The translations under genes and the position numbers were made by a program. The notes beneath the pieces were generated by a model that was not told where the DNA came from, did no database searches, and saw only the letters and a program-made list of their open reading frames with translations. Below are positions 809 to 40,500 of a stretch of 64,000 nucleotides of DNA, piece by piece; within the stretch, counting starts at the first letter, position 1; each line of letters opens with the position of its first letter. The stretch comes from Haliotis rufescens (taxonomy: Eukaryota): assembly GCF_023055435.1 (NCBI RefSeq), contig NW_025964361.1, positions 31,062,001 to 31,126,000 of the forward strand, written 5' to 3'.

Positions 809-3090
809 TCCCCATATCATGAGTGTACTCTCATACCGTAGCCTCACAATCTGGTTGCCACTACCAGCACGCAGGTGTGAACCCTCTGGTAGTGAACAAA
901 CAAGAATGCCATCTTGCGTTGTCAGTGTAACATTAGGCAAGACGGAGTTACCTCTCTTATACCACTCACGTCATGTTGTCTTCAGGAAGCGTTGCAATTC
1001 AATGAAGTAATGTTCAAATAATGTACTCACGGCATAATTCTGAAACATAAGAAATGTTCAATATTTATTTTTCTCTAAATAAATTATTTGAGTTTATTAA
1101 ATAACGATGTATGATATGTGTTTAACAAATTAATTACACTCCAGCAACATAAGCATTCCATTCCATTGTGGTTGCATCCGCGAACATAACATCCCTTTTC
1201 GCGAACACCTGGTCTCATCACTATTTGATAGTGATTCATAAACACATGTACATGGTATGGTCGGAATCGTACAACGAACTCGTTATTTTTATGAATATGG
1301 AAAGCGCTTTATAGCTTATATTTAAACATAAACTAAAATTAAAGGAAACATCGTTAGATTGTGAATAAGTTTTAAAACGTGGCTACAGGAAACTGAATTC
1401 AGGTTGATAACGATTGTCTATGCACACCAAAATCATCTTACTGTAAGAAGTCAGTACATTTTGAGAAAACAATTGTCTCTGAAAATATATTTGATTGATA
1501 GAAACAAGGGATTCCATTCAAAATAATTTCATACTTTTAAGTTAACACTGTTTCTTTCATGCTGATTGGCTGAATGGGTAGTCACGTGACTAGCTCAGAG
1601 GTTCACACAGTTTAACCAGCGCTTTTAAAATCGTTCACACTTCAATGAACCCATCCAAACTGACGTTCAATTCTTAATTGAAAAGGAGCCCCAATGATGT
1701 GGGAAATTTAGGGAAATCTAGGCTTGCATCATTTGACGCTTTGGCATTACAGAAGGGGCTGGGCAAAATAATATAAGGGAAATAATATGACACAGGGACT
1801 GTGAGGCAGGTTAAACAACAACGTACAGGAACTTTAACGTGCGCTATTGGAGGAGTGGGACCGCATACCCAATGATGTCATTAGGTGGCTTACGTCATCG
1901 ATGAGGCGACATGTCCTAGGCTTCCCGAGGAGTTCACGCTCAATAATGATGTCATTACCAACGCTCTATGAAAGTGTTCAGATGTTTGTTATCACACTTT
2001 CTGTGAAAGGTTACAGTAATGACAACAGGTGTATTTGATGTTAATTCATCACAGGGCTATTAGTGCCATGGAATTGTCGTTTGGCTCGTTGTATAAATAG
2101 TGATGAAACTTCAAAATGCATTCAAATAAAATGTGTACATTTCGTCGTTTGCTTTTTATAAGCAGTCCATGTCAATGTATACTTTCTTGTGATCAGTAGT
2201 GTATTTGAGACTAGGTACAGTTCGGGACGAAGTACGTGTGATGCCACTTACTGGTTAGGTCTGGTTGAGTGAAGCTAAAGGTAGTTTTCCCCAAAGTAGT
2301 AGCTGTATCTGGTCTCTGATTGGCCACACAGTCCCCCGGGTTCTGAGACAGCTGTATAGTGTCGCCCTCCTTCTGTAAAGCCTGTAGGAACAAAACGAGT
2401 TTCTCACATACTTAGGGGCGGTCGGGTAGCCTAGTGGTTAAAGCGTTCGCTCGTCACGCCAAAGACCCGTGTTCGATTCCCGACATGCGTACAATGTGTG
2501 AAGCCCATTTCTGGTGTCCCCAGCCGTGATATTGCTGGAATATTGCGGCGTAAAACCATACTCACTCGCTCACTCACTCACTCACTTACATACGTATTGT
2601 ATGTGTCAAGTGCTGAAGAACGTAATGCATGGTAAGTGTAGTCATAACAAATCTATTCAAATCATGTTATCACTTATATGTTATCTTGAGAGAGAGAGTG
2701 ACAGTGGTTTAACGCCGCTTTCAACAGAATTCCGGTCGTGTCAACTTAATGTGGGAGGAAAGCCCGAAGAGATAATGAAACCCAGGAGCCCCGGCATGAT
2801 ACTGAGAAACCCAGAAATTTCATCAGGGTGAACGGGATTTGAACTCATGACCCCCTGTTTCTGGCACGCTCTGTGACACAACTCTGCACAGCGAATCTTG
2901 GCGCCTTTGACGCCTGCTCCTATATCAAGAGATGATTGAACGATCCTCATCATAATGTTATATCTGTTACAGATCAGAAACAAAGTGTAAAATGACTGAA
3001 TTATTTTGATGTTTATTTCATCGCCCAGTTACTTAAAAGGATAGCATCAAAAGAAAAAGAAAGACAACATATTTTATTTTTTTATAATTT

Positions 3091-3125
<35 letters not shown>

Positions 3126-3126
3126 T

Positions 3127-3157
<31 letters not shown>

Positions 3158-6100
3158 GGGGGGGGTCTAATCCTAGCATAGTTAGTCTATTGTGTTTTTG
3201 TAAGCCATATTGAACTTCTTAATGATATTTAGTCAGTCCGCCAACTAAATGGACCAAATGTTTTGTCATTTTGTAAAATGACTGAAATATTTAGGCATTT
3301 AATAAATTGCCTATTTGAATCACATTTTACAAATTTACTGTAACACCGGATATCAAGAGCAAATAACTTAACCATGGTTATAAGCAGTCCAAGACGTATT
3401 TGAGATTAGGTAAAGCTCGGGGTGAAGTACGTGTGATGCCAAATACGGGTTGTTAAATAGTTAAGTGTGGGCGTTTATACATATCAAGGTTAATTCTCCG
3501 CCTTCATATAGTTTAGGCCTCGCTGTATGATGGCTCATATTACAAAGAGCTGACGCAAGTGAAAACTATTGTAAATGGTTGAGAAGATATGTTACTACTC
3601 ACTATACATGTGTATCTGAATGTGTTTGTGTCGTTGACTTCGTTATCGTTGTTGTAGACGTGGAGGAAGGTGATGTTGCCGCTGCGAACCTCGTGCACAC
3701 AGATCACACTGCCGTTGGCTGGTGGAGACAAAATACATGTGCAACTTGGCTTGTGTTAGCTTGTGCAACAGTTAGTGGATGGTCCTTACCGCCGCATCAG
3801 CTGGGAAGCAGATGAGGCACCCTTGGTTCGATAAAGTATGTTATTGATGCCACCCTCCCTGATAATGCTAGAATATTGCTGTGTCTCCGAATATTCCCAC
3901 ATTCACTGCCTACTGTAGCATGACACCATCGTTTTGCCCTTGAATATTGACATAGATACCACATAAGGATGATGGTTTTCCAATCATCTGTTGAGATAAG
4001 AGCGGCATGGGTGGTGGCACGGTCATCTACACCGCCGGAATTCGTTGTGCTAAGTTGTATTAAGTAATGTGTCGAAAGCTATATATTACTTAGTATAATT
4101 TGCATTACGCACAACCATAAACTAAGTAATATATTCTTGATTCTGAGTAATGTATTCTTGGGAATCGAATGCAAATGTATCCCTAATGAATTCTCATTTT
4201 ACAACTATACAAGTACAGAGCACTGTATGCGCACAAGGAGCACAGACTGACTTGTGGTATCCAGTGCCCAATCAGGCAGATACAGAAACACGAAGTCATA
4301 CAACAACTTGCGCAAGCGGGCCTGTAGTTGATAGCAGGCGCAGCGGCCGGCAATATATTGACAGGGACGTGTTGGACCCTCGTGACGATCCAGTGACAGG
4401 GACCTGATGGACCCTCGTGACGATCCAGTGCCCTGGATCTGATGGACTCTCGTGACGATCCAGTGCCAGGAACCTGATGGACCCTCGTGATGATCCAGTG
4501 CCAGAGACCTGGTGGATCCTCGCGACGATCGAGTGCCAGGCACCTGATGGAATGCCTCATGACGATCCAGTGCCACCAACTGTCTTCACCAACTTATCCG
4601 ACTAACGGGATAGGGTGTCAGGCTCGGTGACTTGGTTCACTGGCAGAAATAGTTAGTCTACTTACTTACTCAGTGAATTTCACAGTCCAGTCCAGTCAGA
4701 TAAAACAAATACTTGTCAGGAGATTTTACAAACCAGTATTTACTTATTAGACTGGAATAGGTGACCTGTCGACGACTGGTACAATTTACTAATCAGTTAG
4801 TAGAGATTACTATCAATCTTTCGAAGAAACTCATAATTTACTAACTGCAATAGTATATTTGCAAGCTTGAAGTATGTTTTGCTGCACTTTAATAAAAGCT
4901 CATTTCTTGGTCATTTTGCGATAATTCCTGTTGACAACTGCTGAAAACAATTTGCAAAAAAACCCAAGTAAATAACATAAACAATACAGGGGAAAGATCG
5001 CATATGATGCTTTCCAGTGCCAGTTTAAATTTACTTACACAGTACTACGAAATACTAATTGACAGGTAAATACAATTAAAAATATATTGTTTTATACTGG
5101 CAAACTTAACAAACCCCCCTTCTTCATTTGGTACTTGCTAAAAAAAACCATTGCATTAATTAACAACGTTAAAAGGCTAATATCTACCTAACACTCGAAC
5201 TCATAATTATCTACTTTTTGTCTCAAAATGGCGAGCCTGACACGAACCAAGGCGGAAGTGAGGATTGTCACGTGGTCTTGACGCCGAAAATGAACTAAAA
5301 CACATATGTGACGTCAATCTCTCCATTCCTTAGAAATAATGGAGCCGCGGCCCTGAGTTACGAGGATGTTCCCTTAATTAAAACACATCCCTACTTTTGC
5401 ACTTTGATGAAACATTGTCTTGTGGAAAATATTTGAAAAATAAAACAGAACTCTTTGCAGTCTGTATGTATACTGTATGAGTCGCCCTTGTGTGATGCAC
5501 GAGGAATACGTTCTCGGTAGCTGTTGCACGTGTACCCAGCTCCGTCGCGAGGTGACATTTACTATGCATGGTACACGGCTCTTCATTATTTCGTGGGGCC
5601 CTAAAGAAGCATTTTATCAATCGCTTGCACGTTGTAAATACATGCTGACGGGGATTATAGGAAATATAGAGACCGGAACAAGGAGTTATATGTGTACCGG
5701 ATCTCGCCAAAGATTAATTAAATTGCTTTAAATACGAACTTTGTTATTGTTACCTACTGTAATACAAAATTATATACATATTATTTATTTACCTTTAAGG
5801 ATTATACGGGGGCCTCGCGTCTATTGTTTTTTTTAGGAATGGAGAGCAATCTTGCAGACAGGATAGGAAATTTGTTGTTTTCGAACCTTCTGGCCGCCAT
5901 CACATAGCTGGATTATTGCTGAGTGGGCCGTTAAGCAAGAAACAAACAAAACACTTTGCTGGTCAGGACATGCCGTTCCACTCACCACTGAACAAGGGCA
6001 GGATAGTGCAGGAGGAGGTGTTGTCCATCTGGATGTATGAGTTGTCCACACAGGCGTCCAAGGAGGCGGGACAAGAGGGGTCCTGGGTGTTGTACACGCC

Positions 6101-9100
6101 GAGCAGCTCCGTGGGGCACGTCCGAGGCCACGACGAGTGGTTACCTGGTTAACAAGGAATAGGAAAATATAGCCATATATAATTTTCTTGAGTCACCTCT
6201 ACGGAGAGATTTATAAGGAATATATTTATTTAGATTGGTTATTTCATGTGTTTGTTGGTGGTATATCACGGAATACACATGTAGAATAATAAATAGAAAA
6301 CTAGCTAGAATATTACGTTTACGACAAGTGTATGTTAATAGGGAACATAAACAGCAAAGCGATAGAAAGTTGACACTTGAAAATTGTATTTGACTGTGCT
6401 GAAAACATTCTCCGAAACACTGCAAACTTTAGGTCCACATTGAGACCATGCAGGAAGAACATTACTGATGTTCTCACGGTTCTAATGCTGATAACCTCAA
6501 TGCACTGCCACATTCAACCCTTCACAATAGCCAGTTATCATTAGTGATGGATGTAGGGCAGCTGCGGCTGCTTTGTCCAATCATCCGTCATCATATCAGA
6601 TCGTAAATAAAACCGGTACTGGTTTTGGAAAACAAGATGGTGACCGGACGAACACCCCACCGGTTAATGTTTTCGATCTGGAATCCTTATAACCCACAGA
6701 GATCATTACCAGACTTTTCTAACGGGACGATCCCTAACCCCGATCAGCAACATACAGACAAGACTCGTTAGACGATGCATGGTTGAGGGGGTACGGTCAT
6801 CGCAGCTTGGGGTGGGGTTGTTTGTTTGTTGTTTAACGCCACACTCAGCAATAGTCCAGCTGTATGACGGCGAGTTGAATGATGCTCTTTGTTGAAGTCC
6901 CATGCTCGACTGTACCTCAAAAGTTGTGAAATGTAGAAACCAAAGGCTGTAGCCGCTGGAATATTGCTCGGCAAATAGGGAATGTTGACTTTAGGGAAGT
7001 TGAAATGATCCCTCTTGTCATACGGTTTGTGGTAAGAATTTGTCATTCTGTATGCATAGATCTAAATATATTTTGTTTGCTTGTTTGTTTTTTAACGCCG
7101 CACTATATGACTGTGGACTGTAACTATTCGAGTCTGGACCAGACAATGCAATGACTGACATCATGAGCATCGATTCACGCAATTGGGATACGATGATATG
7201 CATCAACCAAGTCGGCGAGCCTAACCGCCGGATCCCGTTAAACGCCTCTTTCGACAAGCATAGTCGCCTGTTAGGGCAAGCATGGGTTGCTGAAGACCTA
7301 CTCTACCCCGAATCTTCACGGGTCGCTTTGGGTGGGGTTGTTACTGACTTGTTTTCAGGAAGACGCTGTACATAGTGGTGAGGTAGGAGGACTCTGGGAT
7401 GTCACAGATACGGGACACAGGATCCGAACCCACTTCAGACAGCTTGAGAAACTTAACGTCATACGGTTTCGTTCCGGGGCCTGCACAAAAACGTGAAATG
7501 TCAATGTTCATATTCGCATATCTATCTTCGACTGGAGTGAACAAGAAAAATGAAAAAGATACAATTCAAGCCAAAAATGAGGCAACTTATGGCGGTCGAA
7601 ACAGTACGTGTTTCTTCACATTCTCGTTGTTTTCTTTAAAGCCATCACACACTGACACAAACCTCACAGACAGTGTAACATCATTATAGCCATTGACGTA
7701 TCTGAGTTAGCATTGTCGTTAAAGTGTTCACTCGTCACGACAAAGACCCAGAAAACTGTCACTCAAAGCGATCTAAGTGTTGCGATTGTCTTAAGTCAAG
7801 GTGAAAATAGATAAGATTCACCGCTTTGGAAAATGGGTCTCGGGTCATATTCCCCAATGCGTTGACATACAGAAAGATACCGAGTCGCTAAAGGTATTGC
7901 CTATTCGCCTAAAATGTTGACATAAATGTTGACTCCATGTCGTTCAATGTGTTGTTAAAAAAATCACTCAATATTACCACATGCCAAATACATGCTTTTT
8001 GAGCAAATAATGTTTATCTACATTTGTACTCTTGGAGAATAATTTATGACGTTCGAGGAATTAATGATCATATTATATTACTCTGCGTAAATTACGTTTG
8101 AATAATAACCCCTCAAAGTGACTATAGTGGCTTTGACGACACAATTTCAGTTTATGATCATGCATCCAGAATGAAAGGTGAGTTAATACAAGGACATACG
8201 ACCCCGGAATGAGATACTAGTGTATGTGTAACTCCCACCTGTTTTGGTAGCTTGGACAAAGGTAGCCTTGATGTCGGACACTACAGTCAGGTCCATACAC
8301 AGGAAGATGTAGCGGAACTCAGCCTCACTTGGCAGCTTGTCACCGAGGACGGAGCTGCAAACACGAACCTTCATCAAGCCGTGTCAACAGACAATTTAAC
8401 ATTGGGACGCCACTCTCATGATGTTGTCGGGAAAAGCGGTTTATCATTATGCTTTTCAGAATTCATTTACTTATACACTCTCAATTATAAATAAAACCAT
8501 GACCTGGAAAAGTAATTCAATTTTGGTTGCATGTAACATGTGGACGCTGCATTTTGAACCACTTAAAACCAAAGGTAGGCTTAAGATAATCAACATGAAT
8601 TATTGAAAGATTGCACAGACTTAATTTCACCAAGTGCGATTTTGAGACAAATAAATCTGTTTTCGACGTTCCAATAATGTTTATAAAACCTGCTATCTGA
8701 GACGTAGACGATGTTATGCATGAAATAGTACACGCGTACTGATGTTCATCATCATCTTCGCAATAACGTTATTTGTTCTTTGTGTTCCGACAATTGTCCA
8801 AATAAACAAAAAATTTCATTAAATATATTTTTGTTAATTGTCCTTACCGGATGACATATTTAGATCCATTATTTGCTAAGCAGTCATATTGTTTGCCAAT
8901 ATCTCCCTCCAGCAGTGGCGCGTCGATAAGACCCAGTCCGTCGATGTGCGACACGTTCACGTTAACAACGGAGTTGTATTTGGACAGCATGTAGGACCCT
9001 TGGAAAGTACTCGGAAACTCACAGAGGCTCTGTGTTCCTGGAGGACAGTAACGCTTAGCATGTACTTATGTTAGATTCATACTGGTAGTAAACGTGTTAT

Positions 9101-9738
9101 GTACTTTATAACGAAAAGATGATGCATTTACTCGCTATTATAAGGCTTATGTGAAACCCTGCCGTCCGCCAATCAGGCATCATTAAAAATAAAATGCAGG
9201 GCAAAAGAAAGTATACATCCATGTTTGATAGGGGCTAAAAATAAAACAAAAAATGGTTACTCGATTGTGATGTATGTGATATAGATATTATAGTTATGTT
9301 TTGGACTTCAAGTTTGCAGTGTTTCGACGACACTTTCAGCAAATCAACGTTTTGATATCCATTTTTTACGTGTATACGTGTCTTTCCGGCAGTTTATATA
9401 CTAGTAACATATTGGTACACACATTTGGGGCTTACAGTTTCAAAACATTTAAGTGTAGTCACGTATGATACGTGTAAATAAAGTGCCCTCATTATTTCAT
9501 ATGTAAATTGAGACCAGCATAATCTCATCGATATGTTTCTCACAAAACAAAAAGAAATCCGTTTCATTCATGAAAACTTGTCTCAGTTGGATGTTACGTG
9601 CATCTCATTACTTAAAAGCAAATGTTTCTTATTTCATTTTCTGTTCATGTGAATTCTGTTATTCCTTAAAATAACTGATCACTCACCTGCAACTTCGAGC
9701 AGAATTAGGAGTAAACTCCAACTAAAGTCAATCTTCAT
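809..9738 (-). CDS. Gene A: secreted or cell-surface Cys-rich two-domain protein, paralog of B and C; 3' end probably outside the window
   Basis: Exons (minus): 9738-9687 MKIDFSWSLLLILLEVAG (signal peptide); 9037-8848 TQSLCEFPSTFQGSY...YDCLANNGSKYVIR; 8354-8239 SVLGDK...YIFLCMDL...ATFVQATKTG; 7480-7349 PGTKPYDVKF...RICD...YSVFLKT; 6144-5986 NHSSWPRTCPTELLGVY...CPASLDAC...; 3718-3603 NGSVICVHEV...FRYTCI; 2381-2252 ALQKEGDTIQLSQNPGDCVANQ...; microexon 1039-1031; tentative 885-809 GSHLRAGSGNQIVRLRYESTLMIWG. All introns GT-AG, phases 1,2,1,1,1,0,1,1, 327 codons with no stop. The last exon is less certain. Confidence 0.88.
1031..1039 (-). CDS. 9-nt microexon of gene A (K-L-C)
   Basis: catttcttatgtttcag|AATTATGCC|gtgagt; phase 1-1; homologous position to the B and C microexons. 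Confidence 0.8.
1165..1310 (+). mobile_element. Penelope-like element 3' UTR fragment
   Basis: Similar to 60180-60340, which follows an RT remnant (acctgg..tcatcact..gatagtgattcataaacacatg..tcggaatcgtacaac). Confidence 0.65.
1800..2203 (+). mobile_element. Tc1-like transposon 3' remnant
   Basis: LEEWDRIPNDVIRWLTSSMRR resembles the Tc1 transposase C-terminus; ends in TIR-like tgtatactttcttgtgatcagtagtgTA related to the ~235-bp MITE ends. Confidence 0.65.
2415..2586 (+). mobile_element. tRNA-derived SINE family S1 (GTC anticodon remnant), (ACTC)n tail
   Basis: A-box tagcctagtgg, B-box gttcgattcc, body tacaatgtgtgaagcccatttctggtgtccc, shared tail. Confidence 0.9.
2697..2917 (-). mobile_element. 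SINE family S3 (tRNA-Leu-like head), degenerate
   Basis: Matches 32903-33183. Confidence 0.8.
4360..4575. repeat. 35-bp minisatellite, ~6 copies
   Basis: Unit ggaccctcgtgacgatccagtgccagggacctgat; period 35 (4374, 4409, ...). Confidence 0.9.
6823..7324 (-). mobile_element. Composite retroposed insert: full S4 + Penelope-like RT fragment + second S4 tail
   Basis: Flanked by an 18-bp direct repeat, 6805-6822 and 7325-7342 (17/18 identical); middle translates YDKRDHFNFPKVNIPYLPSNIPAATAFGFYISQLLRYSRA. Confidence 0.8.
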
Positions 9739-16242: not shown

Positions 16243-19200
16243 ATGCTGAAGATGAAGATGCAAACGTGTCTTGTAGTCTTGTGGAGCATTCTCCTCTTTG
16301 TTCGGGAATCAGGTAGGTGATGTCAACACTTCTCTTGGCACAGCATGTCTGGTATTTGTTTTTCATGTGTATTTTTCGGTGTGATTTTCTCAGGAGAGGG
16401 AGCCTGAGAGTTTATATTCTCAACAAAAACCGAGAAGAATTGTTTTCTCTGGTTTATAAACTGTCACAAAGACATTTAAAGCGTTATATTATCATTTTCT
16501 GGACAAAAATATAACTCCAATCTTTAACCCTTTTAGACGAGCATATTGAAATATATATCACACTATCTACACTCAATTTCTTGATAAACAAAGATGCAAA
16601 TATATCCATCCTAGGAAACATCATATTGCAACCGCAAATAGATTTTGAAGAGACTGTCCTAGGATGTGATGTTTCAATTCACGAATGTTTTCATCAAGAC
16701 ATCTGCATTCCGGACAATATCAAGACCTATTAATGTCCAAAATAATTTTTTTTAAATTTTTCATATCTGAACTCTCTGGACAGATTGACAATATCGCCCT
16801 GATAGGATTCCTGGCTTGTCAGCATCATAACGGTGCTCGTTGGCTTCAACAACTGGTAGACGTCTACAGTTTGGGTTTTCCTTCCTCATTAACACACCGT
16901 GACATGAGTTAAATACTGCTCAAAATTGTTGAGCCAAACTCACTCACTAATTCATTTTTACTAGTATTTCGAAGCAGCCATGTAACTTGCACATTCCTGG
17001 AAATTGACATAGGTGATGCCTCTTTTTACAGATTGTCAGTGTGACTTCCCTATACAAGGTAACTGGTACATGTCCAGAAGTAACGAGAAGCTGAGTTTTC
17101 AAGGCTCAAGTGTCCTAGGTTTTACTTTTGAAGGAGGTCCTCTACTTCAGATCGACCTGACAACAACTTACAACTGCATTGCTACCGACGGCAGCAGATA
17201 TGTTATACAGTAAGCACTACTTTCTTGCTGCATCCTGTTGTTGATATCTATGTTTTGTTTGTTTGTTGTTTAACGCTGCACACAGCAATATTCCAGCTAT
17301 ATGACGGCGGTCTGTAAATAATCGAGTCTGGGCCAGACAATCCAGTGATTGACATCATGAGCATCGATCCACGCAATTGGGATACGATGACATGTATCAA
17401 CCATGTCAGCGATCCTGACCACACGACCCCGTTAGTCGCCGCTTACGACAAGCATAGTCGCCTTTTACGGCAAGCATGGGTTGCTGAAGACCAATTCTAT
17501 CCCGGATATTCACGGGTCTGTTGTTGATATCTAATTTACTCCTATGCAGATGGCGACGTTGGCTGCTACACTACAGTCACATCCCCAGTCTAGGGATCTT
17601 GTGGAATAAAAAAATGCTTGCTATTATATCGCATTGATTGTTATCAACGTTTAAGGCGCCGCAATTCGCTTTGAAGAGTTGCGTCCCTTGGGAAGCCTGA
17701 AATCAGAAGCCTATGATTATTGGTTTGAATTCCAGTTCGCGGCTATTATGTTTCTAGATTTGTCAGCACGATACACGTGTTTGGGTTTTTGAGACCTGCA
17801 TCACTGCGGGCATTCCTCCCACATTAAGCTGACTCGCCATGATATGCCTGGAATACTGTTCTAAGATGCGTTAAACCAAACTCCTTCACTCACTTACTCT
17901 TGTCACCAACCACTAGACAGGACTTAACGTAAGGTGTGACAAAGCTATGACACTGCTGGCAGTGGTATAAAACCTGATTTCCTAACTCACTTCGCGCATA
18001 TGCTACTTCTTCGTCATCACATCAGCAAACAATTGGTAAAAGATAATGGCCATCCAAGCAAGCACCATCACGTATGTCTTACCATGTTTAAAGTAATGAA
18101 ATCCAGTCAGTATGAGCGGTTGGTATCTCTGACAGGAGCAGCCAAGGCGTGGCAGAGGCTGGCGGCCTTCAACACGCCTTCACCTGCCTTCACTTCATTT
18201 CCGGGGAAACAACTGGAAATATCGCCACATTCGTTCAAGCCACAATCACAGGTAATACTCATGACATCTGTTCAAAGTCTGACATGTTTGCATGCACAGG
18301 TAATCTGAAATGAAATACGTATCTATTAACCATGAGCACTATAATCAATACACTGTAGATATCGCTTGATCTCACCCAAGCGATATCGACGTTTTGGATG
18401 ATAAACAACAAACAAATATGAACTATTCAATGATTTCTTCAAGGCCCGGCGACAGCTCCATTCCTTGTGAAGTACATCACTGCGGCCGCTTTAAGTGCTG
18501 ATTACCTCACCAACGTGTGTGACCTCGCCACGCCCTACCCTGAACACAGATACCACGTCTTCGTCAGAGAAGGTAGCTGTCGATCATTCCCATTGTTTAA
18601 AACGTGTCATGGATATTTACATGATGAATCTGAAGCATGGGTACTTCAAGGAGGATTTTGCTCTGAGGTCTGGTGTCCATTTTTGCCTTGTTCTAGAGTT
18701 TGTAATTAATACCTGGATGGAATCAAGACATTGTGTCGGTCTAATTTCGGTTACTATTCATCGTTAAACTGATACCCTTCATAGGTGTTAAACCAGCAGG
18801 CACACACGGTCATGTTTTAGGACTTGATTCACATTTCCGAGGACTACAAATTTGCCGGAACCTCCTTCCTTTTAACAGATAACCCGTTAGACAGACAAGT
18901 ATTCAGAAGGATAAACTCTGTATGGAAAGAAGTATTGGACTTCATCGAAGCTATACATAAAATTTGTACTTTAGATACTTGAAAATATTTCTCAATTTCT
19001 AAAAGTGATTTTAATTAGCAATACAAAAAACGCCAACGCCAGAGAATAATAAGTCTCAATTAGCCAAAGAAACAGATTCCATTGGTATTGAAAGGAAAAA
19101 TAGCGGTTACAATTACAGTAAACTACGGTTATAACGAACTCAAAGGGACCCCTTATCTTAGTTCGTAATAACCGTAGTTCGTTATAAGCGTATATACAAC

Positions 19201-22200
19201 AAATGGGCGGGACCAGAATATACAGTTCGTTATATCCGTCAGTTCGTTATAAGCATACTGTATAAGCATAAGTTTACTGTATGTGAATCGAAACTCAACG
19301 GTACGTGGATTGATCCTTTTCGCATTTCCTCCAATAGAAACGTTGTAAGAAAAACAAAATAACACCTTAATATTTCAGTGTTGGTACAATGTAAGGTTTA
19401 ACAGTAGAGTGCCTCACATTTTCAGTATCTGTACAAGGTCAGGTACTATATAGTTTTCATTTAACGATGGAACACAAACACGCTGCGCTCGTTAACTTGA
19501 TTCCCATCTACAGCTGTTCTCGGCAGCGTGGGCGTGGCCTGCCCGGGGGAGCTACAGGGTCTCCTGACGGTCACAAGCCCGCCCACTGCATGTCCAGCGT
19601 CACTGACCGGCTGCAGTAGCTCCACGTCTTTGCAGAAGGGCGACAGCACCACATGCAGCTGCACCGGTTGCTCCGCACCGTTATACTATGGTAGGTATAG
19701 ATATATTGTTGTTGAGATACTAGTATATCATAAAAACCTTTGACTGTAAAGGACAGAAATATTGGAAAGTGGACGCCATGGCCAAACGGAAATAGAAAAT
19801 AAAGTGGCTCCACCACTGAAAACATTGCTCACATAATAAACTATCATTGTGCCAAGGCATAATCTTAAGCTACATGTATATTGCATATATCTACTGGACT
19901 TAATTAGGTGTACTTGATTGGTTCTACTTTTCGAGACACTTTCCGCCATTTTGGTGCGCGTTATTTGTCCACGTGAAGTTAACAGTGTTAAAGTGATTTA
20001 GCTGGCAGTTTGTTTGTTAAATCAATACATTAGAGGATTGCTTCATGCGAATTAGATTAACGTTTCATTTTTGTCCCAGCAACAAACCCGGTGAGATGTT
20101 TGATGAACAGAACAGACACAACCAACAGCAGATCCTACGTCACGCTCATCAACCCGGAATTAACACAGCGCTTTATTTGTATTGTAAGTGCCACGTTATA
20201 CCAAACCTTTGTGCACATCACTTAAAATTGAAATAGATATAGCAAACCGCTTCATTCACATTGCACATTACGTAATCACTAAACCATACTTGAGAATGAA
20301 TGACGATTCGCTGATGTAATAAATTCAAATCTAAGACCCCGCTGAAGGGGAAACGGTGGAACATTCGTCTAGGGTGCCACTGCTGGGTTGCATCTCTTAT
20401 GACAGACAGAAACCTGTGACCGAGGGTTCGAATCCCGGTTTTCCCTATTTATGATTATTTTAACATCTCAGATTAGCGTCATCTCGGGCGTTTTCCAACA
20501 TCAAGCTCACCGGCTTGAAACGGCTTTAAACAAAACTCACTCACTCACTCCCTCCGCGGTAGTGACAATATAATGTTGAATGAGGACGAATTTGAGAATT
20601 AATACATCCGATTCGTATTTTATTTCTATTTCTTTGTGAGGACGTGTATAGTAGATCGCGTGTGTCTGCTATTTTACTCAAGTGTATAAATGAGGTTGTG
20701 CTAACGATAGATAGAACTGAAGACTAAATATTGACAGTAGCGGGTGACCTCGCCAAGATGACCACAACCAAGCTGTCTTCCCGATGAACGTCAGTATGTC
20801 GCGTGATGTTTTTACGTTGACGATCGAGCGAGATATACAGAACTTCTTTAGAGGAATTCCTCAGTGTCGACAAATAACGTCAAATAGGGACGGTATCACC
20901 ATACGATTCAGGCTATGAATGATATGTCTGATCACCGACTTCAGCCACAACTGATCATGATACTGCTCTACCTGCCAAAAGAAATCCCTTAGCTCCACAC
21001 CGTCTTGTAGGCCAACATGCATCGGGAATCCAAACCGCACCGCCTCAAGCTGTACTCCCCGTCTTCAGCAGCTCATCTAGCCTTAGTATGACTCAAACAC
21101 GCACCCAAAGTATACAAAACGTTTTATTAATACATTTTCAGAATCAATCCGGTCTGGAATTCTTTCCAATTCTAGCTTTTCTGGGTGCAACTTCTATTTC
21201 AAATGAATGACATTGACGTAGCAGCCATTTTATGGCTTTTTTAAAAACCAAGGGACGTAACTCCCATGGACTGTTTGGGGCGGATGACGACAAAAGCAAC
21301 TACTATAGTTCGATGTAAAACATTAAAGTTTGGTGTTTAAGTGGATTGTGTTGTTATGTTTTATATATCCGTTAATATAAGGATTAAACTTGTATTTGTT
21401 GACAACAAATACAACTTCAACCCATTAATGGAAATGGTATATGGGTTGGACACATGTAATATCGACATGCATACTTCAGGTTGTGAAGGAATCTACATCT
21501 GTGTCGACCGTCAGCTTCTCACAACGACCTCTGCAATGCGACGAGAGTCAATCCTCCACCACTGCAACAGGGGGTGAAGCTTTCACATTTGGAAAAGGTG
21601 AAGTATTTGTGTCATGACCTTGAATAACTAGTTTCACAAAGGATATATAACAACATGGTATTTTTTAAACATTATATATTTTTGATTTCACCACTTTATA
21701 TACATGGGGCTTGGTGGTATTAACATCTGCACTTCGACAGTGTTACGGACTATGACATGTAATAGATACGAGTACCCAGTCAAGTCTATTTTTATATATA
21801 ATTTCATTTTACATATAAATGTTATATTATCACCGTATTGTTTCCTTTTCAGAAACCTGTCGTAAGTAGACTCACGTCGATCATGACGACCAGGCTTGCA
21901 GTCTTGATGGTATCACTGCGCACCATAGATCAGGTGTTATCTCTGTGGCTTTTTTAGACGTAGATTTAACGTATATTTTAAGGGGAGGATTGGTAGAGAC
22001 GTTTTCATTCATTAAGCACCATATGTCTCAGGTGAGTGATATCTCCATGTGTTCTAAATCCATTTGTCTCAACTCAATATATTAAGAGTATAAGTGTTAA
22101 TGTTAAACGTACATATGTGATATGTGTTGGCTATTTTCTTCAGGGGGGCACGGGTGGCCCAGTCGTCTAAGGCGCCGCGATTCGCTGTGCAGAGTTGCGT

Positions 22201-25200
22201 CCCTTGGGCACGCCAGAAACCTATGATTGTGGGTTCGAATCCCGGTTCGCCCCGATTATGTTTCGTGGGTTTCACCGAAGTGGTAAACGTCTGAGACCTG
22301 CATCACTTCGGGCTTTCCTCCCACATTAAGCTGACACGCCGTGATATAACTGGAATAATGTTAAAAGCGGCGTTAAACGCAACTCACTCACGCACTCACT
22401 TTTTTCTTCAGTAATAATGTAGCACTGTTATAGCATATTGTGTTATGTTGCAGCTCCAGAGCCTAGTGATGGCACACTTAGTGCCACCGCTTTATCCATC
22501 ATCGGGGCTGTTGTGGCCATTATTATCATCATTATCATCATCACTGCCATCGTCATATTCATCATCTGCAAGAGGAGAAAGAAGAGGGAAGAAGAGAAAA
22601 AAAGATTGGAGAGACGAGCTATGAGGAGAGAAGAGAGAAGAAGACGGAGACTTGAGAGACAGGATAGAATACGAAGTATGTGTCTGGTACACGGTGTAGG
22701 TTCTCACCGAACCAACACAATGAGATGTTTACTCTGTCTAGAGTCCCAATACAAGGTCTATTGTGTCTATGTTCCCACATGACCAAAAACGTATATGTCG
22801 TCACACTCTAGATTCTGATCTCCTATGAAATTCCGTGTTAGAATTGATCTTCAGCAACCCATGCTTACCGTAAAAGGCGACTATGCTTGTCGTAAAAGGC
22901 GACTAAGGGGATCGGGTGGTCAGGCTCGCTGACTTGGTTGATAAATGTCATCGTATCCAAATTGCGTAGATAGATGCTTATGATGTCAATCACTTTATTG
23001 TGATCGGATCATTTACATACCGACGTCATATAGACAGAATATTGCTGAGTGCGGCGTTAAACAAACAAACAAACAAATAAACAAATCATCTAACCAGCAC
23101 AAGTACTTTATGTGCATACTGTGTCAATATTCTCACCTAAGGACTACAAATATTCCCTACTCTAGATTCTCACATATTCACAACAATTATCTGTCTACTC
23201 TGTCCAGATTCATAATTTTTTTATAATAATCTAAAGAGATAACAGTATTTTGTTCTGTTTCAAAGTATTGACTTGTAAATATATTGTAAAATGTACATTT
23301 GTTATAGGCTTATGAGTTTATGGTCTGATAATGTATGAAACTTCTTCGTTGAGTGACGACAAGCCTTCACTGATTGTATTGCCCGAGACACATGTGGTGT
23401 TACAGGAGGCCTCCCTGTCAGCGACCTGGACAGCGACTCGGACTCCTGCTACAGCACACAGTCCAACACCACCTTGGAGGAAACAGATGACAAGCCCATC
23501 TTCAAGAGGAAGAAAAGACCCTCCACACCCAAGAAATTAGGAAAGAAATTCAGGAAGATCTACGACGAAAAGGGCAACCTTATTCGAGAGGTACATCCCA
23601 ATTTAACACTGCCCACATGTTGAGTTTAATTTAAGCGCAGACGAAGAAGGGAGGGGGGTAGTGTCACAACTCGGCGTCGCGTCCAAGATTATTGCACTTA
23701 TATAGCGACGTGCATGCAGGTGTGTGTGTGGGGGGGGGGGGGGGGGGTCTGCTTGTCCTAGTCCGGACTGATGCCGATTTATAGTGCTAGCTCACTGAGA
23801 TACCATGCCGCAGTTTAACATGAATACCTCACTCAGACACAGTATACTGACTCCGAGCCGACCAGTCCTTGTTTTAGCCCCTTAATGCCGAGCGCCAGAC
23901 AGGGTAACAACAAGTAACATCTTTTAACGTCTTTTGGTATGACGCGGTCGGGGATCGAACCCCGGACCTTCCGCTCTCCCGGCGGACGCTCTACCACTAG
24001 ATCACGGAGGCGATCCTTCGTGGCATGAACAACATCATGGTGCGATGACATGCAATTAGGCAGCACCACTTGACAGGATCGCCATTTCTGTTCACTTTAG
24101 ACGCAACCATGTGGGACCTGATCTGCTCACACTGACAGGGAGAAACATTGGGTCGTCGGGCTTAGGGGTCGATCATTTGATATTCTAAGTGCGAGAGACT
24201 TGTAAACAATTTACCTCAGGTTTAATCCCAAAAGATAGTTGTTGACAATGCTGGTTCTCCTTAAAGAAATGAGTGCGTGAGTGAGTATGGTTTTACGCCG
24301 CTTTTAGCAATATTCTAGCAATATCACGGCGGGGGACACCAGAAATAGGCTTCACACATTGTACCCATGTCGGGAATCGAACCCGGGTCTTCGGTGTGAC
24401 GAGCGAACGCTTTAAACACTAGGCTACCCGACCGCCCCCTGAAAGAAATGTGTGAATAACCTATTGTACGGTTCCTTATGATCGGTTACATGATCAGTTC
24501 CTTTGAAGTGAAACGTCATCGTTTACAGCTGTACACATGTGGACGCAGGACATTGTGGTAAGGTGTGCTTTCATTGCATCTTTCAGGAAGAGATACCTCC
24601 GGACTCAGATGATTCTGGTGACGAAACGGTAAGAAAACCCAGGTATTTGTTTTGGGTGTTTAATGAGATGCGGTTGTGTGTTGACGCCGCACTCAGCCAT
24701 ATTCCAGCTATATGACGGCGGTCAGTAAATAATCGAGTCCGGACCAGATAGGTTAGTGATTGACATCATGAGCGGCCATCTATGTAAATGAGATACGATG
24801 ACATGCATAAACCATATCAGCAAGCCTGACCAACCGGACAAGGTTGTCGCCTCTTATGACAAGCATGGCTTGCTGAAAACCACTTGTAACTCGGATCTTC
24901 ACCGGTCGTGTTGAATTTTGTCTCTGTTTGACAAAATGAGATGAACAGTTATATTTGCTACACCTTTAAATAGAAAGAAAGTTTTCTCGTCCACAGTTGA
25001 CGTTCTATATACATGCCTTTTCCAGATTTACACAGTAACTGAGGACGGCCGACAGGTGAAGAAGAGACGAGCGAAGAAGACGAGGAAGTACATCAAGGAG
25101 AGGAAACTTCCAAATGGAAAGAAGGTACACCACCACTACAATAGGGGATGAAAATATTAATAAAAGTTATACTTTTATAAAGCTTTGCAGACCTATAAGT

Positions 25201-32880: not shown

Positions 32881-32902
32881 TTCGGGGCGTGATGTAACAG
32901 TG

Positions 32903-34769: not shown

Positions 34770-34905
34770 TGAGGTGAAGTTGGGTTTAACGTCGCGTCCA
34801 AGATTATTGCACTTATATAGCGACGTGCATGTACGTGTGTGTTTGTGTGGCCCCGGACCTTCCGCTCTCCGGGCGGACGCTCTACCACTAGACCACGGAG
34901 GCGGT
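34770..34905 (-). mobile_element. SINE S2 with ~210-bp internal deletion
   Basis: TSD cgcagtgttagg at 34758-34769 and 34906-34917; head fused directly to tail. Confidence 0.88.
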
Positions 34906-37050
34906 CGCAGTGTTAGGGAAATATAATAACGTTCTGTCCGCCCGTCATTCTATCTACCCTATCAAAAAGCGTTAGTGGGATAAAGGAGGACAAAGAAATA
35001 CTAATCAAAAGAAGTTAACGATTCTTTCACTTTATTAGTGTTAATATGACACGGAATGACAGATTAACTATAGTAAAATGAACAAATCGGGTGTTCTTTA
35101 ACTTCATTTGAGTATTATACATTGTCTTGAAACTTTACAGTGTTTCGTATTTCATCAACGCCATCATACATCTTCAGTAGCGACAGTGTAGCCGAGTGGT
35201 TAAAGCGTTATCTCGTTACGCCGAAGACACGTTCGATTCCTTAAATGGATGAATTGATCCAGTTCTGACGTCCGGTGCTATGACATTGCTTGATTATTCT
35301 TAGAGCATCATTAATCCATACTCACTCACCCATTTCTCTTGCTGTGGGGAGGGATGAGTATTGATTGATAATGAAAGTCTCGTTTGAAGAGGTCAGTGTG
35401 TGAGTGTGAACCATTTATATTCTCTTCTAGGTTCTCCTGAGTAAAGTATTTTAGGTGTAGTATGAATTATCTGTGTTAGATGTATACTTCCTGATGCTGT
35501 CATCGTGTTTCAACATGTGTACACCTCACGAACAATTATACCTTCGACCCATCGGTTACCATTGTTTGGTTTGGGTAATGACATTCTCCTTCTCTCTTAA
35601 CAGTGACTTCTTACAGGATGTGTCCCGCACGTTAGTGTTGTTGGATGAGACGGCTAGTTTAGGGTCAATAGAAAGTTATAGTAGCGTATGGGCCCAAGGT
35701 GGTATGTAAATAGAATGGAGATATAATATTCTGCATAGTCGATGAATCGTGAGATCAATATACCACAACAAAGCGATAAATGAATGAGGCTGTTCGGTTT
35801 CTTTGTCAGATGGAAGGTGCTGGAGGCGAATCCGTTTAGTTTATCGTTTAAAATGAGAAATAAATAATGAAAAATTCACTTGAAAAGTTTCTGCAATGCT
35901 TTTCCATGATATTGGGAGATATTTTCGCTAAAATGTAGACTGCTGGCAATACAAAGTATACACTTAAAAATACAAACGTTATCAAACCGTTACGAACTAC
36001 TCTGAGGGGCATTTAGAAGTTGGGAGTACTATGTGAGGATAAGATATATGGATGATCAAGGCACCACTTGTTTGATTACAGTGTTAGAATCAACACAGAA
36101 ACGTCGTTCCTAATTGTAATAAAGAAGTTGTTCTATGATATATATTGTCCTTACTTAAACCGTTACCCGTCTGAAAACAGTCGCCGAAACAACTTTAGAT
36201 ACATAACACAGTTATGACACCTGAATCAAATACATCACCATCGAATAACCATTTCTTTCGTTTTTCAATTTAAACCATAATCAAACCTGGATGTGTACGT
36301 TCTTTTGCCAGGCAGTTTACATTGCAAATATTCAATATTTTAGTTATTAGGGGACTAGGGGTAACCAGATTCGGTATTTGACAGTGTGAACCACCATACG
36401 CTTCACTCAGCTTGTTATTGTATTCCCATTCATTTGAATGCATGACTGTCATATGATTTGATTAATCCACTGATTGTTAAATTCAAAATGTCACCGCGAG
36501 AGAATTATCACTTTCGATTATCCGCCAAAATAGACTCCGATGGGCATAAAAGGCAAAACAGTGATGAACGTTACACGAATGGATCACTGAATCTCGGTGA
36601 TGACATCACGTGTTCGCGTTGTATTTCCAAAATTTATCCACCAGAATGGGAACCTGTTTGGTTCTTACTTTTTATCACCTCATGTACACGTATAGATTAA
36701 CCATTATAATGATCATATGTGATCTAACAATGTCGGCATCGTTGTATTACTTGACAGAGAACTATGGCTTTTCTTGGACGTCGTACGTCTGGGCCATCTG
36801 TATTATGACCTTGACCTCCGCTCCCAGTGGGTGCTATCGTTAGGGTACAACATGCTCGCCCGTTCCTGAAACATCTGATGCCACCATTGAAATTATATTT
36901 AATTTTGCTCCCAGCTTGACTGTTCTTTATTTGACTGAAATATGAATATTGACGTTTTTTTCCATTGGGTACCATTGCTCATTTGAACTAAAAACTGATT
37001 TTGACGTTTCAGTTTTCCAGACAAATCAAAATTAACTTCAGACACTTATT

Positions 37051-37056
37051 TTTATT
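37051..37056 (-). terminator. Putative polyadenylation signal of gene C
   Basis: AATAAA on the minus strand ~520 nt after the stop codon. Confidence 0.45.
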
Positions 37057-37576
37057 TTTCAAAACAAACACACACACATATAAATAATCAAATACATCAG
37101 TGGTAGCGTATTGCATATCGCAGTCAATAAACAGCTAACGAAAGTCTACTCTTTCCACATAAACACACACAAGGTATAATTACGGATCATAAACGATCGT
37201 TATTTGATACATATGAATTTGTACATTAATTCATCACATTTAATAATAAACAACGTTGTATCTACGCCATCAAATATATTTTGAAGGAATTAATATGCTA
37301 TTTGTGTGATCTTTACAACCATTATTGTTTAATATATATTTACATAATATCATAACGTTCAATAATAAACAAGATTGTATCTAAGCCATCAAATACAATT
37401 TGAAGAAGTGTTATCCCCATAACAATCCATTTCATATGAGTAATCCCACAACTATCCCACACATGTTGATATGCTCTAATACATGGTGACACAATACATG
37501 GTGACCTGAATCTGATGAAGTAACACATTGTTAGTCCACTAATTTCGTCCTGTCCAATGTCAAGCACAATGCCCTT

Positions 37577-40500
37577 CTACTCTGACTTCTTCTTGTCTTT
37601 CTTCTTCTTCTTTTTCTTCTTCTTCGACTTCTCTACGTTTTCCTCTTGTGGTGCTTTAGAAGTGTCTTCCGGGCTTGATTTGACTGAGCTGTCCGTGGTT
37701 CCTTGTTTCACTGCGCCAGCCTGTTCAGCTTTAACGAGACTTCCTGATGATGCCCCAGCAGGCGTAGTAACAGCAGCAGTAGTTACAGCTGTAGGTTCAG
37801 CTTTAGGAGCGGCGGTGGTAGCAGCTGTTGGTGCAGGTGTAGGGGGAGCAGTAGTAGTAGCAGCTGTGGGCGCAGGTGTAGGGGTAGCAGCTGTAGATGC
37901 AGGTGTAGTGGTAGCAGTAGTAGCAGGTGTAGACGCAGCTGTATTAGGAGCAGGAGTAGTAGCAGCAGCCGAGGGAGCGGTAGGAGGAGCAGTTGCAGCA
38001 GTTGTAGTAGTAGCGGAAGCCGATGGTGTACTTGAAGAAGCAGCTATCGGGGTGCTTGAGGCAGTAACTGGTGTCGTAGAAGCAGGTTTCGCTGTTGCTG
38101 CAGCTGTGGCAGTGGCAGTTGCAGCTGCGGCTGCTGGGATTGCATCAGGCGGTGGGCGTGATGTGGGTTCACTTGGTTTACTCTCAGGTTTAGGGTTATC
38201 CTGGACTTTACTGGGTGACTCCTTTGGCTTTTCTGGTGACTTGTCTGAACTTTTCTCTCCCTTCTTTGCCGCCGTGGATGTTTCGTTGACAGTTGTAACC
38301 ACTGCTGGTGCTACAATCGTGACATGTTTAACATGGCCATTGGTCGGTGTTTTACCGTTGGCAGTTGAGGTTTTGGAAGGATGTGTGGATTTCTTCCCAT
38401 CTGAAAAATAAATGTAAACTTTTGATTGTATCTGTACACAAGTTATGTAAATTTCATTTAGAACTTAAAATATGCAAGCGTTACACACGTCTCGCTCCTA
38501 AAACTGACAGTAGGGGTGTAACGAAAGCTCAAATTTAAACAACGACGCAGTGAGACTGTCCATGGTCCTATTACGTGAAGCAGATAAATCATGGGGACCG
38601 TCGTCGACGATCACGGTTTCGTTATATTTATCAAATTAAATCCTCAAATTACTTATAACCAACGTTGTATGCAATTCTTATTAAGATACATATTGATATC
38701 TATTCAAAACAATGGCAGCTGCATACAAAGCTACCTTCTTTAACTCTCTTACACGTTCCCTGAACCTAGACGCATTGGGTTTCACCTGATATGAAAAAAA
38801 TGATACTGTTCAGAAGGGCGTAAATCCCCATGCTGACACTCACTGACTCATTCACTGACTGACTCACTCACTCACTCACTCACAGGGAGCCACGAAATCA
38901 GCGCACCTGAGAGGTGAAGGTGAATATGATAGAGTATTAGTCCAATGCCCCCGATCGAATGCAACTGGAAGGGACATGGGTTGCGCGGTTGTCTAAGGCC
39001 TAGTTATTCGCTGTGCAGAGTCTATTGCGCGTGGAAGAACCCTATAACAGTGGGTTCAAATCCCAGATTCACCATGATGAGTGTTTCTAGGTTTGTCAGT
39101 ATCGTATCCGTGCTCGAGGGTTTCACCAAAGATACAAAACTTATAAATTCTGCATCATTTCGGCTGACACGTCGTGATGGAGTGAGTGAGTCGGGTTTAA
39201 CGCCGCTTTTAACAGTATTCCAGTTATATTACGGCGTGTCAGATTAATGTGGGAAGAGCCCAAAGTGATGCAGGTCTGAGACGTTTACGCCGTGATGTAT
39301 CTGAAGTACTATCATAAATGGCGTTAAACCAAATTTACGCACTTATCACTCAAACCAATTGTTTTTTAACTATATGTATATTACACTATCAATACGATAT
39401 TTATCAAGCAGAGAACATAACGGCCAGCATGCAGTTTAGAATTTGAAATGACATACCGTCTTGAACTGTATTCAATTTCTTGTTGCGCTTCTTCATTAAA
39501 AAGACAATGACAATAACAGCAATGGCTATCAGGATGAGGATACCAACAGCGGCTCCACCTGCGATGGCCCCGATGCCATCCTCCTCTTCATCTGAAGTTA
39601 TCGCTGGCAACAATCGATTGTGAAGAAGACATAAGTAAACAAGCTGACAAGGAATAGAATGACATCATCTTTGAAAGTGATCTTAACAACAAATGTCGTA
39701 CATATTAAAGTTTATATAATATATAATTCAACAATATTAGTACAAAGCAATAAATGTTAATGTTATGATAACCAACGCAGTTTAGGTTACATGCTGTTTT
39801 ATGTCCATGCATGCCTGAGTTAACTTAGATGTATTAAGTAGTACTTACGACACAGTTCTGAAATAGATAAGGAAATATTTGTTAATATGGATTCCACGAT
39901 CGATTTCTGAAACATGTTTATACACAACAGAATGTTTTCTATTTACAATCACAAAGCGTTGTAAAAAAATGCAGATGCATGGATACTTTCACTGTGGATA
40001 AATGATATCTGCACGATAATATGTGTTATGTTGTGTTCTAGTATCACCTTATACTCAAGTCACACTCAGGGATAGGTGAGCGTGGGGGGCACATACATGA
40101 CAATATTCTTTAATCTGTTAATTGTTATCAACATGTAATTAATATTACAATTTATCATCCGCACTCATCTATATGACGACGGTCTGCAAATAATGTCATT
40201 GACAACATGAGAAAAGATCCACACAAGCGGGATACGATCGCGATGACAATGTCGTTTGTTGTTTAACACCGGAGTCAGCAATATTCCAGCTATGTCACGG
40301 CGGCCTTCGAACCATATAGTGTAATCACAAGAGTAATTCCATCACTATCGAACGAACTGTGAATATGAGAGTCTTGACCAGTCACAAAGATGATTTGTAT
40401 TATGAGCATTACCCACGTCGTCTATGTACGATGACACGCAAGTCACCAAGACTGATCACCCGATCTACGTCGCCGTCTCCCACGGCAAGCAAAGGTTGCT

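What the first reader, a model, noticed from the sequence alone, without database searches (positions are those of the whole stretch)
1031..39857. Conserved 9-nt cysteine microexon in all three paralogs completes an even Cys count
Seen: AATTATGCC (1039-1031, K-L-C), AAACCTGTC (21853-21861, E-T-C) and AACTGTGTC (39857-39849, E-L-C). Each has a strong pyrimidine/TTTCAG acceptor and a GT(A/G)AGT donor, is phase 1-1, and lies at the same position after exon 7. Predicted mature ectodomain Cys counts are 11/13/11 without it and 12/14/12 with it (this depends on my signal-cleavage estimates for B and C). Inference: it supplies the closing disulfide of domain 2. Because it preserves frame, skipping would leave a free Cys, a possible splice switch for dimerisation or folding. 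Gene predictors usually miss such exons.
Basis: partly seen in the sequence, partly recalled or inferred. Interest (0 to 1): 0.82.

Follow-up and report, generated by a model that had tools for sequence, protein, structure and literature searches.

The report
Conserved 9-base cysteine microexon, abalone paralogs
Three neighbouring red-abalone genes for related membrane proteins each carry a real 9-base exon that supplies the twelfth conserved cysteine just outside the membrane; the public annotation already includes it in the middle gene, and nothing here shows that it is a regulated switch.

Summary
All three 9-nt segments sit at the stated coordinates, each with a pyrimidine tract ending in tttcag and a gtaagt or gtgagt donor. 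Each lies between a phase-1 exon 7 and the transmembrane exon 9.

The pattern has only 8 hits in the 1.33-Gb genome, against 4 for a reversed control. Only these three have a pyrimidine tract.

The genome is Haliotis rufescens. Gene B is LOC124148097. Both RefSeq isoforms contain ...FGK-ETC-PPEPS..., and their exon map uses 21853-21861 exactly. The H. cracherodii ortholog model has ETC too. The H. asinina model has AVV there, with no Cys.

Models of A, B and C joined only in local scripts are open, share intron phases and are 25-33% identical. They share 12 aligned Cys; the microexon encodes the twelfth, and exon 9 always adds a Pro after it.

The splice-switch idea has no support. No annotated isoform skips the exon, the 3' splice sites look strong, and no UGC motif lies upstream.

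Inclusion in A and C, and the partner Cys, could not be tested.

The parts
1031..1039 (-). Gene A microexon (exon 8), AATTATGCC. Encodes (A)AA-TTA-TGC-C, which reads K-L-C plus the first base of a Pro codon.
   Evidence: The frame follows from the exon 7 end and the exon 9 start.
2252..2381 (-). Gene A exon 7, 130 nt, phase 0 to 1. Holds conserved Cys 11 (..PGDCVAN..).
21853..21861 (+). Gene B microexon (exon 8), AAACCTGTC, reads E-T-C. Used in RefSeq XP_046374991.2 and XP_046374992.2.
   Evidence: One search found a single GT-AG exon map that reproduces the RefSeq protein.
21480..21597 (+). Gene B exon 7, 118 nt, phase 0 to 1. Holds conserved Cys 11 (Cys278).
   Evidence: RNA contigs cover it.
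22454..22675 (+). Gene B exon 9. Starts with CT (completing Pro), then a stalk linker, the TM helix and a KRRKK stop-transfer stretch.
   Evidence: RNA contigs lie on 22454-22676.
39849..39857 (-). Gene C microexon (exon 8), AACTGTGTC, reads E-L-C.
40693..40807 (-). Gene C exon 7, 115 nt, phase 0 to 1. Holds conserved Cys 11 (..PQDCFAN..).
39457..39603 (-). Gene C exon 9, the TM exon. An acceptor at 39603 gives C-P. A second in-frame AG 12 nt downstream, at 39591, would give C-H. Which one is used was not verified.
16243..20183 (+). Gene B exons 1-6: 16243-16312, 17032-17209, 18136-18251, 18444-18572, 19514-19690, 20080-20183. They encode the signal peptide and the ectodomain.
   Evidence: One search gives the exact map to the RefSeq protein. 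Spliced RNA contig record 25 joins exons 2-5.
3603..9738 (-). Gene A exons 1-6, my model: 9738-9687, 9037-8848, 8354-8239, 7480-7349, 6144-5986, 3718-3603.
   Evidence: The joined frame is open, splice sites are GT-AG, and intron phases match B. No transcript evidence.
41470..48043 (-). Gene C exons 1-6, my model: 48043-47986, 45973-45802, 44419-44316, 43905-43765, 42637-42461, 41582-41470.
   Evidence: The joined frame is open and intron phases match B. No transcript evidence. Exons 1, 3, 4 and 6 are the least certain.

Best explanation
A, B and C are three tandem paralogs in Haliotis rufescens. Each encodes a type I single-pass membrane protein. The ectodomain is a divergent DUF7043/7044-like domain followed by a DUF7042-like domain. 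Each gene has a 9-nt exon 8, phase 1-1, between exon 7 and the transmembrane exon 9.

The microexon most likely is spliced in constitutively, by ordinary strong splice sites. It encodes the twelfth and last conserved extracellular Cys. Exon 9 always adds a Pro straight after it (KLC-P, ETC-P, ELC-P). A linker of variable length (15-32 residues) then runs to the membrane.

The Cys most likely forms an intramolecular disulfide at the C-terminal end of domain 2. The simplest partner is the conserved exon-7 Cys, 22-28 residues upstream.

Shown: the exon exists in all three genes, B uses it, and the Cys is conserved with an even count.
Inferred: use in A and C, constitutive inclusion, and the disulfide partner.
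For: Sequence and chance.

Use in B: the RefSeq protein P0001 (XP_046374991.2) matches exon 9 at 100% identity and reads ...FGK-ETC-PPEPS.... Only one GT-AG exon map reproduces that protein, and it uses 21853-21861. Isoform X2 and the H. cracherodii ortholog model also carry ETC.

Transcription: contigs from public runs are spliced across B exons 2-5 and lie on exon 7 and exon 9. From the depth figures, one X2 contig (depth 8.8) appears to lie on both exon 7 and exon 9, with no depth in the intron between them.

Conservation: the joined A, B and C models are open, have identical intron phases, and are 25-33% identical, with 12 aligned Cys columns including the microexon Cys followed by Pro. 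The Cys codon differs synonymously (TGC in A, TGT in B and C) and the middle codon varies freely, as expected for coding constraint.

Placement: the Cys-to-membrane distance varies (15, about 17 and 32 residues), while its distance from the exon-7 Cys is nearly fixed at 22-28. That ties it to the folded domain rather than to the membrane.

Splice architecture: the pyrimidine tract abuts the AG and no TGC lies within 60 nt upstream. SRRM3/4-dependent microexons typically have a distant pyrimidine tract and a UGC motif (10.1101/2024.09.17.613571).
Against: - The letters between exon 7 and exon 9 in the RNA contigs were not visible. SINE-derived joints filled the joint tables, so I did not see inclusion directly in reads.
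- No transcript or annotated protein was retrieved for A or C.
- The H. asinina ortholog model has AVV in place of ETC.
- Skipping keeps the reading frame, so the genome cannot exclude a minor skipped isoform.
- For B the count is even only if the signal peptide is cut after Cys25.
- The AlphaFold2 model gives no information on disulfides.
Confidence: 0.7

Rival explanations
1. Regulated splice switch. The microexon is skipped in some tissues. This leaves 11 conserved Cys, one of them free, and changes folding or covalent dimerisation.
For: Phase 1-1 keeps the frame when the exon is skipped. The H. asinina RefSeq model of the B ortholog lacks the Cys while keeping the exon-7 Cys. That model could reflect a skipped or different isoform.
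Against: Both RefSeq isoforms of B include the exon. The 3' and 5' splice sites are strong, and no UGC enhancer motif lies upstream. The X2 contig I infer spans exon 7 to exon 9 shows no intron signal. The H. asinina difference replaces three residues rather than simply deleting them, since the stretch from FGK to LSAT has the same length in both models.
Confidence: 0.1
2. The microexon Cys makes an intermolecular disulfide. The result would be a covalent homodimer, or a heterodimer among A, B and C, as with membrane-proximal cysteines of other type I receptors such as LYVE-1.
For: The Cys lies in the stalk, outside the recognisable domain matches and 15-32 residues from the membrane. In canonical DUF7042 proteins of this genome, the Cys that aligns with the exon-7 Cys has no partner inside its own domain. 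An unpaired Cys at that point therefore has precedent in the family.
Against: The conserved count is even with this Cys included. If this Cys linked two chains, another conserved Cys would be left without a partner. The distance to the membrane is not conserved, whereas the distance to the exon-7 Cys is.
Confidence: 0.15
3. In A and C the 9-nt segments are unused relics, and only B splices the microexon.
For: I obtained no transcript or protein record for A or C.
Against: At 25-33% protein identity between paralogs, the flanking introns are unalignable. Yet the acceptor, Cys codon, Pro junction and donor are all intact in A and C. An unused 9-mer would not keep these signals.
Confidence: 0.05

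Closest known systems
Conserved frame-preserving microexons (3-27 nt) of animal genes, including the SRRM3/4 (eMIC)-dependent neuronal programme
   Same: It is 9 nt long and symmetric in phase. It is conserved far better than the surrounding introns, has a near-consensus 5' splice site, and encodes a few residues at a domain edge.
   Different: The pyrimidine tract directly abuts the AG and no UGC motif lies upstream. It therefore lacks the cis architecture described for SRRM3/4-regulated microexons (10.1101/2024.09.17.613571). No alternative isoform is annotated. It looks constitutive.
DUF7042 / DUF7043 / DUF7044 domain proteins of protostomes (Pfam PF23069-PF23071)
   Same: It shares the N-terminal C-x-F-P...G-x-W motif, the order of a 4-Cys domain followed by a Cys-rich domain starting with C-P, and Cys columns that align with two canonical members of the same genome. 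The ESM Atlas nearest clusters are all of this family (score 0.90, 205 shared features).
   Different: Pfam scores stay below threshold: 17 bits against a cut-off of 27 for single exons of A and C, and no hit for the full-length B protein. The canonical members examined in this genome are intronless, about 650 aa long, and carry a second domain set and a ShKT-like Cys motif. A, B and C have nine or more small exons, one domain set, a TM helix and, in A and B, a long charged cytoplasmic tail.
Membrane-proximal cysteines that dimerise type I receptors (e.g. LYVE-1, PMC5122770)
   Same: A single Cys in the extracellular stalk of a single-pass protein.
   Different: Here the Cys completes an even conserved count and keeps a fixed distance to an upstream Cys, not to the membrane. 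No dimer evidence exists.

Membership tests
Microexon (internal exon of 27 nt or less) | Length of 27 nt or less, flanked by AG and GT | tested here: met
   9 nt with cag acceptor and gtaagt or gtgagt donor in all three genes.
Microexon (internal exon of 27 nt or less) | Present in mature mRNA or protein | tested here: met
   Met for B only. RefSeq X1 and X2 contain ETC, and the exon map uses 21853-21861. A and C could not be tested.
SRRM3/4 (eMIC)-regulated neural microexon | UGC motif between the pyrimidine tract and the AG, with a distant pyrimidine tract or branch point | tested here: not met
   No TGC within 60 nt upstream in A, B or C, and the pyrimidine tract abuts the AG. Criterion taken.
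SRRM3/4 (eMIC)-regulated neural microexon | Tissue-specific inclusion | not testable with these tools
   The single read-laying run gave contigs only, and the tissue of each run is unknown.
Pfam DUF7042/7043/7044 | HMM score above the gathering cut-off (27 bits) | tested here: not met
   About 17 bits for exon 2 of A and C (DUF7044, DUF7043) and exon 5 of C (DUF7042). No hit for full-length B at E up to 0.1. Joined A and C models were not sent to the tool.
Pfam DUF7042/7043/7044 | Family-like Cys pattern and C-x-F-P start | tested here: inconclusive
   Cys columns align with two canonical own-genome members, but the segment ends were fixed by me. The Atlas feature search points to the family at 0.90, which is a lead only.
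Type I single-pass membrane protein | N-terminal signal peptide and one TM helix followed by basic residues | tested here: met
   Hydrophobic N-termini in exon 1. TM exon followed by KRRKK, WRRKK or KKRNKK. The AlphaFold2 model puts a helix at 313-375. No dedicated predictor was run.
Disulfide-linked receptor dimer via a stalk Cys | An unpaired extracellular Cys near the membrane | tested here: inconclusive
   The conserved count is even with this Cys included. Pairing could not be modelled.

The most novel reading that the evidence does not exclude
Skipping of the 9-nt exon is used in some tissue, stage or species to switch these receptors between an even and an odd Cys count. The switch would control covalent dimerisation or retention by ER quality control. 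On this reading, the H. asinina model without the Cys reflects that skipped state rather than an annotation slip.
Probability: 0.08. Interest if true: 0.6.

Novelty: new member of a known kind. Interest (0 to 1): 0.27.

Why it matters
This is a clean example of a tiny exon preserved through gene triplication, at 25-33% protein identity, because it carries one structural cysteine. It is useful as a test case for microexon-aware annotation. RefSeq has it in two abalone species, and the H. asinina model has no Cys there, which may be a miss.

It also marks the domain-to-stalk boundary of an uncharacterised family of mollusc membrane proteins. It does not open a new mechanism. The exon is already in the public annotation for gene B, and the regulatory idea has no support so far.

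Tried and rejected
**Read laying.** SINE copies at about 17250-17520 and 22140-22400 filled the joint and loose-end tables. The exon 7 / 8 / 9 joints were among the rows not shown.

**Word-based protein searches.**
- Exon 9 of B found nothing in its length range.
- The ectodomain of P0001 found only B and its H. asinina ortholog.
- An alignment of P0001 with A and C exon pieces again found only those two, because low-complexity words saturated the candidate list.
- The RefSeq proteins of A and C were therefore not retrieved.

**The look-up of encoding contigs.** I could not look for the microexon in the H. asinina gene.

**AlphaFold2.** Run on P0001 with a 5-row alignment. Mean pLDDT was 34.9 and the ectodomain was below 50, so it is useless for pairing cysteines and no fold search was run.

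**Pfam.** Full-length B gave only TM-type noise.

**Other loci.**
- The five other genome hits to the microexon pattern are chance matches without pyrimidine tracts.
- A weak exon-2-like hit on contig C323 has no TM exon or microexon within 20 kb downstream.

**Rejected lead.** The CAG-N9-GTAAGT hits at 2260-2252 and 44324-44316 are not further microexons. They are the 3' ends of A exon 7 and C exon 3.

**Joined models.** The joined A, B and C models were built only inside local scripts, to check frames and count Cys. Searches were done exon by exon, by reference.
Full report
**1. Observation**

- A, 1039-1031 (-): tttcag|AATTATGCC|gtgagt
- B, 21853-21861 (+): tttcag|AAACCTGTC|gtaagt
- C, 39857-39849 (-): tttcag|AACTGTGTC|gtaagt

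The exon before each one ends with a single extra base. The microexons therefore read K-L-C, E-T-C and E-L-C in phase 1-1, as claimed.

Chance cannot explain this.
- CAG-N9-GTRAGT occurs five times on both strands of the window, and three of those are these sites. The other two are the 3' ends of A exon 7 and C exon 3.
- The tighter pattern CAGAANNNTGYCGTRAGT occurs eight times in the whole 1.33-Gb genome, against four for a reversed control.
- The five hits elsewhere have no pyrimidine tract and no transmembrane exon downstream.
- When 129 nt around the three sites are aligned, the only contiguous conserved block is acceptor, exon and donor.

**2. What the genes are**

The window is G000:C583:31062001-31126000. 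The organism is Haliotis rufescens, named by the source records of the matching proteins.

A search of protein cluster representatives with exon 9 of B returned one 1041-aa protein at 100% identity. It is XP_046374991.2, 'uncharacterized protein LOC124148097 isoform X1'. Its sequence reads ...FGK-ETC-PPEPSDG... just before the transmembrane helix.

Requiring GT-AG borders and an exact translation gave a single exon map:

| Exon | Coordinates |
|---|---|
| 1 | 16243-16312 |
| 2 | 17032-17209 |
| 3 | 18136-18251 |
| 4 | 18444-18572 |
| 5 | 19514-19690 |
| 6 | 20080-20183 |
| 7 | 21480-21597 |
| 8 (microexon) | 21853-21861 |
| 9 | 22454-22675 |

The gene runs on to 32287 in about 23 exons.

Isoform X2 and the H. 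cracherodii ortholog model also contain ETC. X1 and X2 differ only by one Gln in the tail. The H. asinina ortholog model has AVV in that place, with no Cys, although it keeps the exon-7 Cys.

**3. RNA**

Contigs from public runs labelled with this or a sister organism are spliced.
- One 925-nt contig joins 17029-17209, 18136-18249, 18442-18570 and 19512-19689.
- Other contigs lie on exon 7 and on 22454-22676.
- From the depth figures, one contig of run X2 (depth 8.8) appears to lie on both exon 7 and the start of exon 9, with no depth in the intron between them.

The nine letters themselves could not be read. SINE copies in introns 2 and 8 filled the joint tables, and only one read-laying run was allowed. 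Direct evidence for inclusion in B therefore rests on the RefSeq proteins. My inference, from general knowledge of how the Gnomon pipeline works, is that it would not place a 9-nt exon without transcript alignments.

**4. Paralogs A and C**

I modelled exons 1-9 of A and C using the intron phases of B.
- The A exons are given. Exon 9 of A lies outside the window, at L004:7677-7408, which is C583:31059408-31059677.
- The C exons are given.

The exons were joined only inside local scripts. All three models are open reading frames with canonical splice sites and identical phases. They are 25-33% identical pairwise.

Twelve Cys columns are shared: four in exons 2-4, six in exons 5-6, one in exon 7 and one in the microexon. 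Exon 9 starts with CT (A, B) or CG (C), so the residue after the Cys is Pro in all three.

The counts are as follows.
- B has the 12 shared Cys, two extra in a C-x-C-x-x-C cluster, and Cys25.
The -3/-1 rule favours that site, but this is my own reading and no predictor was run.

I could not retrieve annotated proteins or transcripts for A or C. The joined models were not sent to any search tool.

**5. Where the Cys sits**

Exon 9 is the transmembrane exon: a linker, about 23 hydrophobic residues, then KRRKK, WRRKK or KKRNKK. The proteins are type I.

The Cys lies 15 (B), about 17 (C) and 32 (A) residues before the helix. In A the linker is rich in Ser, Thr and Pro. Its distance to the conserved exon-7 Cys is nearly constant, at 22-28 residues. 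That ties the Cys to the folded ectodomain rather than to the membrane.

**6. Family**

- Single exons of A and C give sub-threshold Pfam hits to DUF7044 and DUF7043 (exon 2) and to DUF7042 (exon 5 of C), each about 17 bits against a cut-off of 27.
- Full-length B gives none.
- The ESM Atlas feature search places the B ectodomain next to DUF7042/7043/7044 clusters of molluscs and arthropods (score 0.90, 205 shared features).
- The genome holds canonical members on other contigs. The two I read are intronless, about 650 aa long, and score above threshold.
- Their Cys columns line up with those of A, B and C, but I fixed the ends of the aligned segments myself.

A, B and C are thus a divergent three-gene subfamily. 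A profile of exon 2 finds only these three plus one weak hit in the genome.

**7. Mechanism**

The most likely reading is a constitutive microexon that supplies the last structural Cys of domain 2, for an intramolecular disulfide. The exon-7 Cys is the simplest partner.

The splice-site architecture supports constitutive use. The pyrimidine tract abuts the AG, the donors are gtaagt or gtgagt, and no TGC lies within 60 nt upstream. SRRM3/4-dependent microexons typically have a distant pyrimidine tract and a UGC motif (10.1101/2024.09.17.613571).

The disulfide partner is inferred only. AlphaFold2 on the 1041-aa protein with five near-identical rows gave a mean pLDDT of 34.9 and an unstructured ectodomain.

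**8. Rivals**

- A regulated skip remains possible, because skipping preserves the frame. The only hint is the H. asinina model.
- An interchain disulfide is possible, but it would leave another conserved Cys unpaired.
- Non-use in A and C is unlikely, given intact signals in introns that otherwise cannot be aligned.

**9. Verdict**

The exon is real and already annotated for B. The even-count argument holds, with the caveat about signal-peptide cleavage in B. The claim that it closes a domain-2 disulfide is plausible but untested. The switch idea is unsupported.

This is a tidy, ordinary example of a conserved constitutive microexon.

Noticed in passing
P0010 (H. asinina XP_067660566.1), residues aligned to B 298-300: The ortholog model has AVV where H. 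rufescens and H. cracherodii have ETC. The stretch from FGK to LSAT has the same length in both. It could be a missed microexon, a different acceptor or a real change. This model has an odd count of the conserved Cys.
   Followed up: partly
window 39591-39605 (-): Gene C exon 9 has two in-frame acceptor AGs 12 nt apart (ccag|CG... and ttcag|AT...). The upstream one gives the conserved C-P junction. Both might be used.
   Followed up: no
window about 26930-27250 (+); P0001 against P0011: RefSeq isoforms X1 and X2 of gene B differ by a single Gln (GDEQQSS against GDE-QSS) in the cytoplasmic tail, as expected for a NAGNAG acceptor.
   Followed up: no
window 17250-17520 and 22140-22400 (+): SINE copies in introns 2 and 8 of gene B attract very large contig depth (10^5 or more) in all four runs laid. 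They swamped the joint tables.
   Followed up: no
window 44566-45571 (-): Intron 2 of gene C holds a long tandem array with a period of about 36 nt. It reads as a repeated ..IDTCDLHLHVAF.. open frame on the gene strand. It has AG and GT pairs in phase but is not part of the paralog alignment.
   Followed up: no
window 37805-38128 (-): An Ala/Thr/Pro-rich open frame lies downstream of gene C's TM exon on the gene strand. It is unclear whether this is a coding tail exon or low-complexity DNA. No B-like tail exons were detected for C, whereas A has them (L004:4247-4116 and 3222-3031).
   Followed up: partly
L015:340-2295 (-) and L016:555-2546 (+): Canonical DUF7043-DUF7042 genes of this genome are intronless ORFs of about 650 aa. 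They have a ShKT-like six-Cys motif right after DUF7042 and a second C-x-F-P domain set. Three near-identical copies lie on contig C57.
   Followed up: partly
window 46244-46480: A run of 237 N lies inside intron 1 of gene C. It was left untouched.
   Followed up: no
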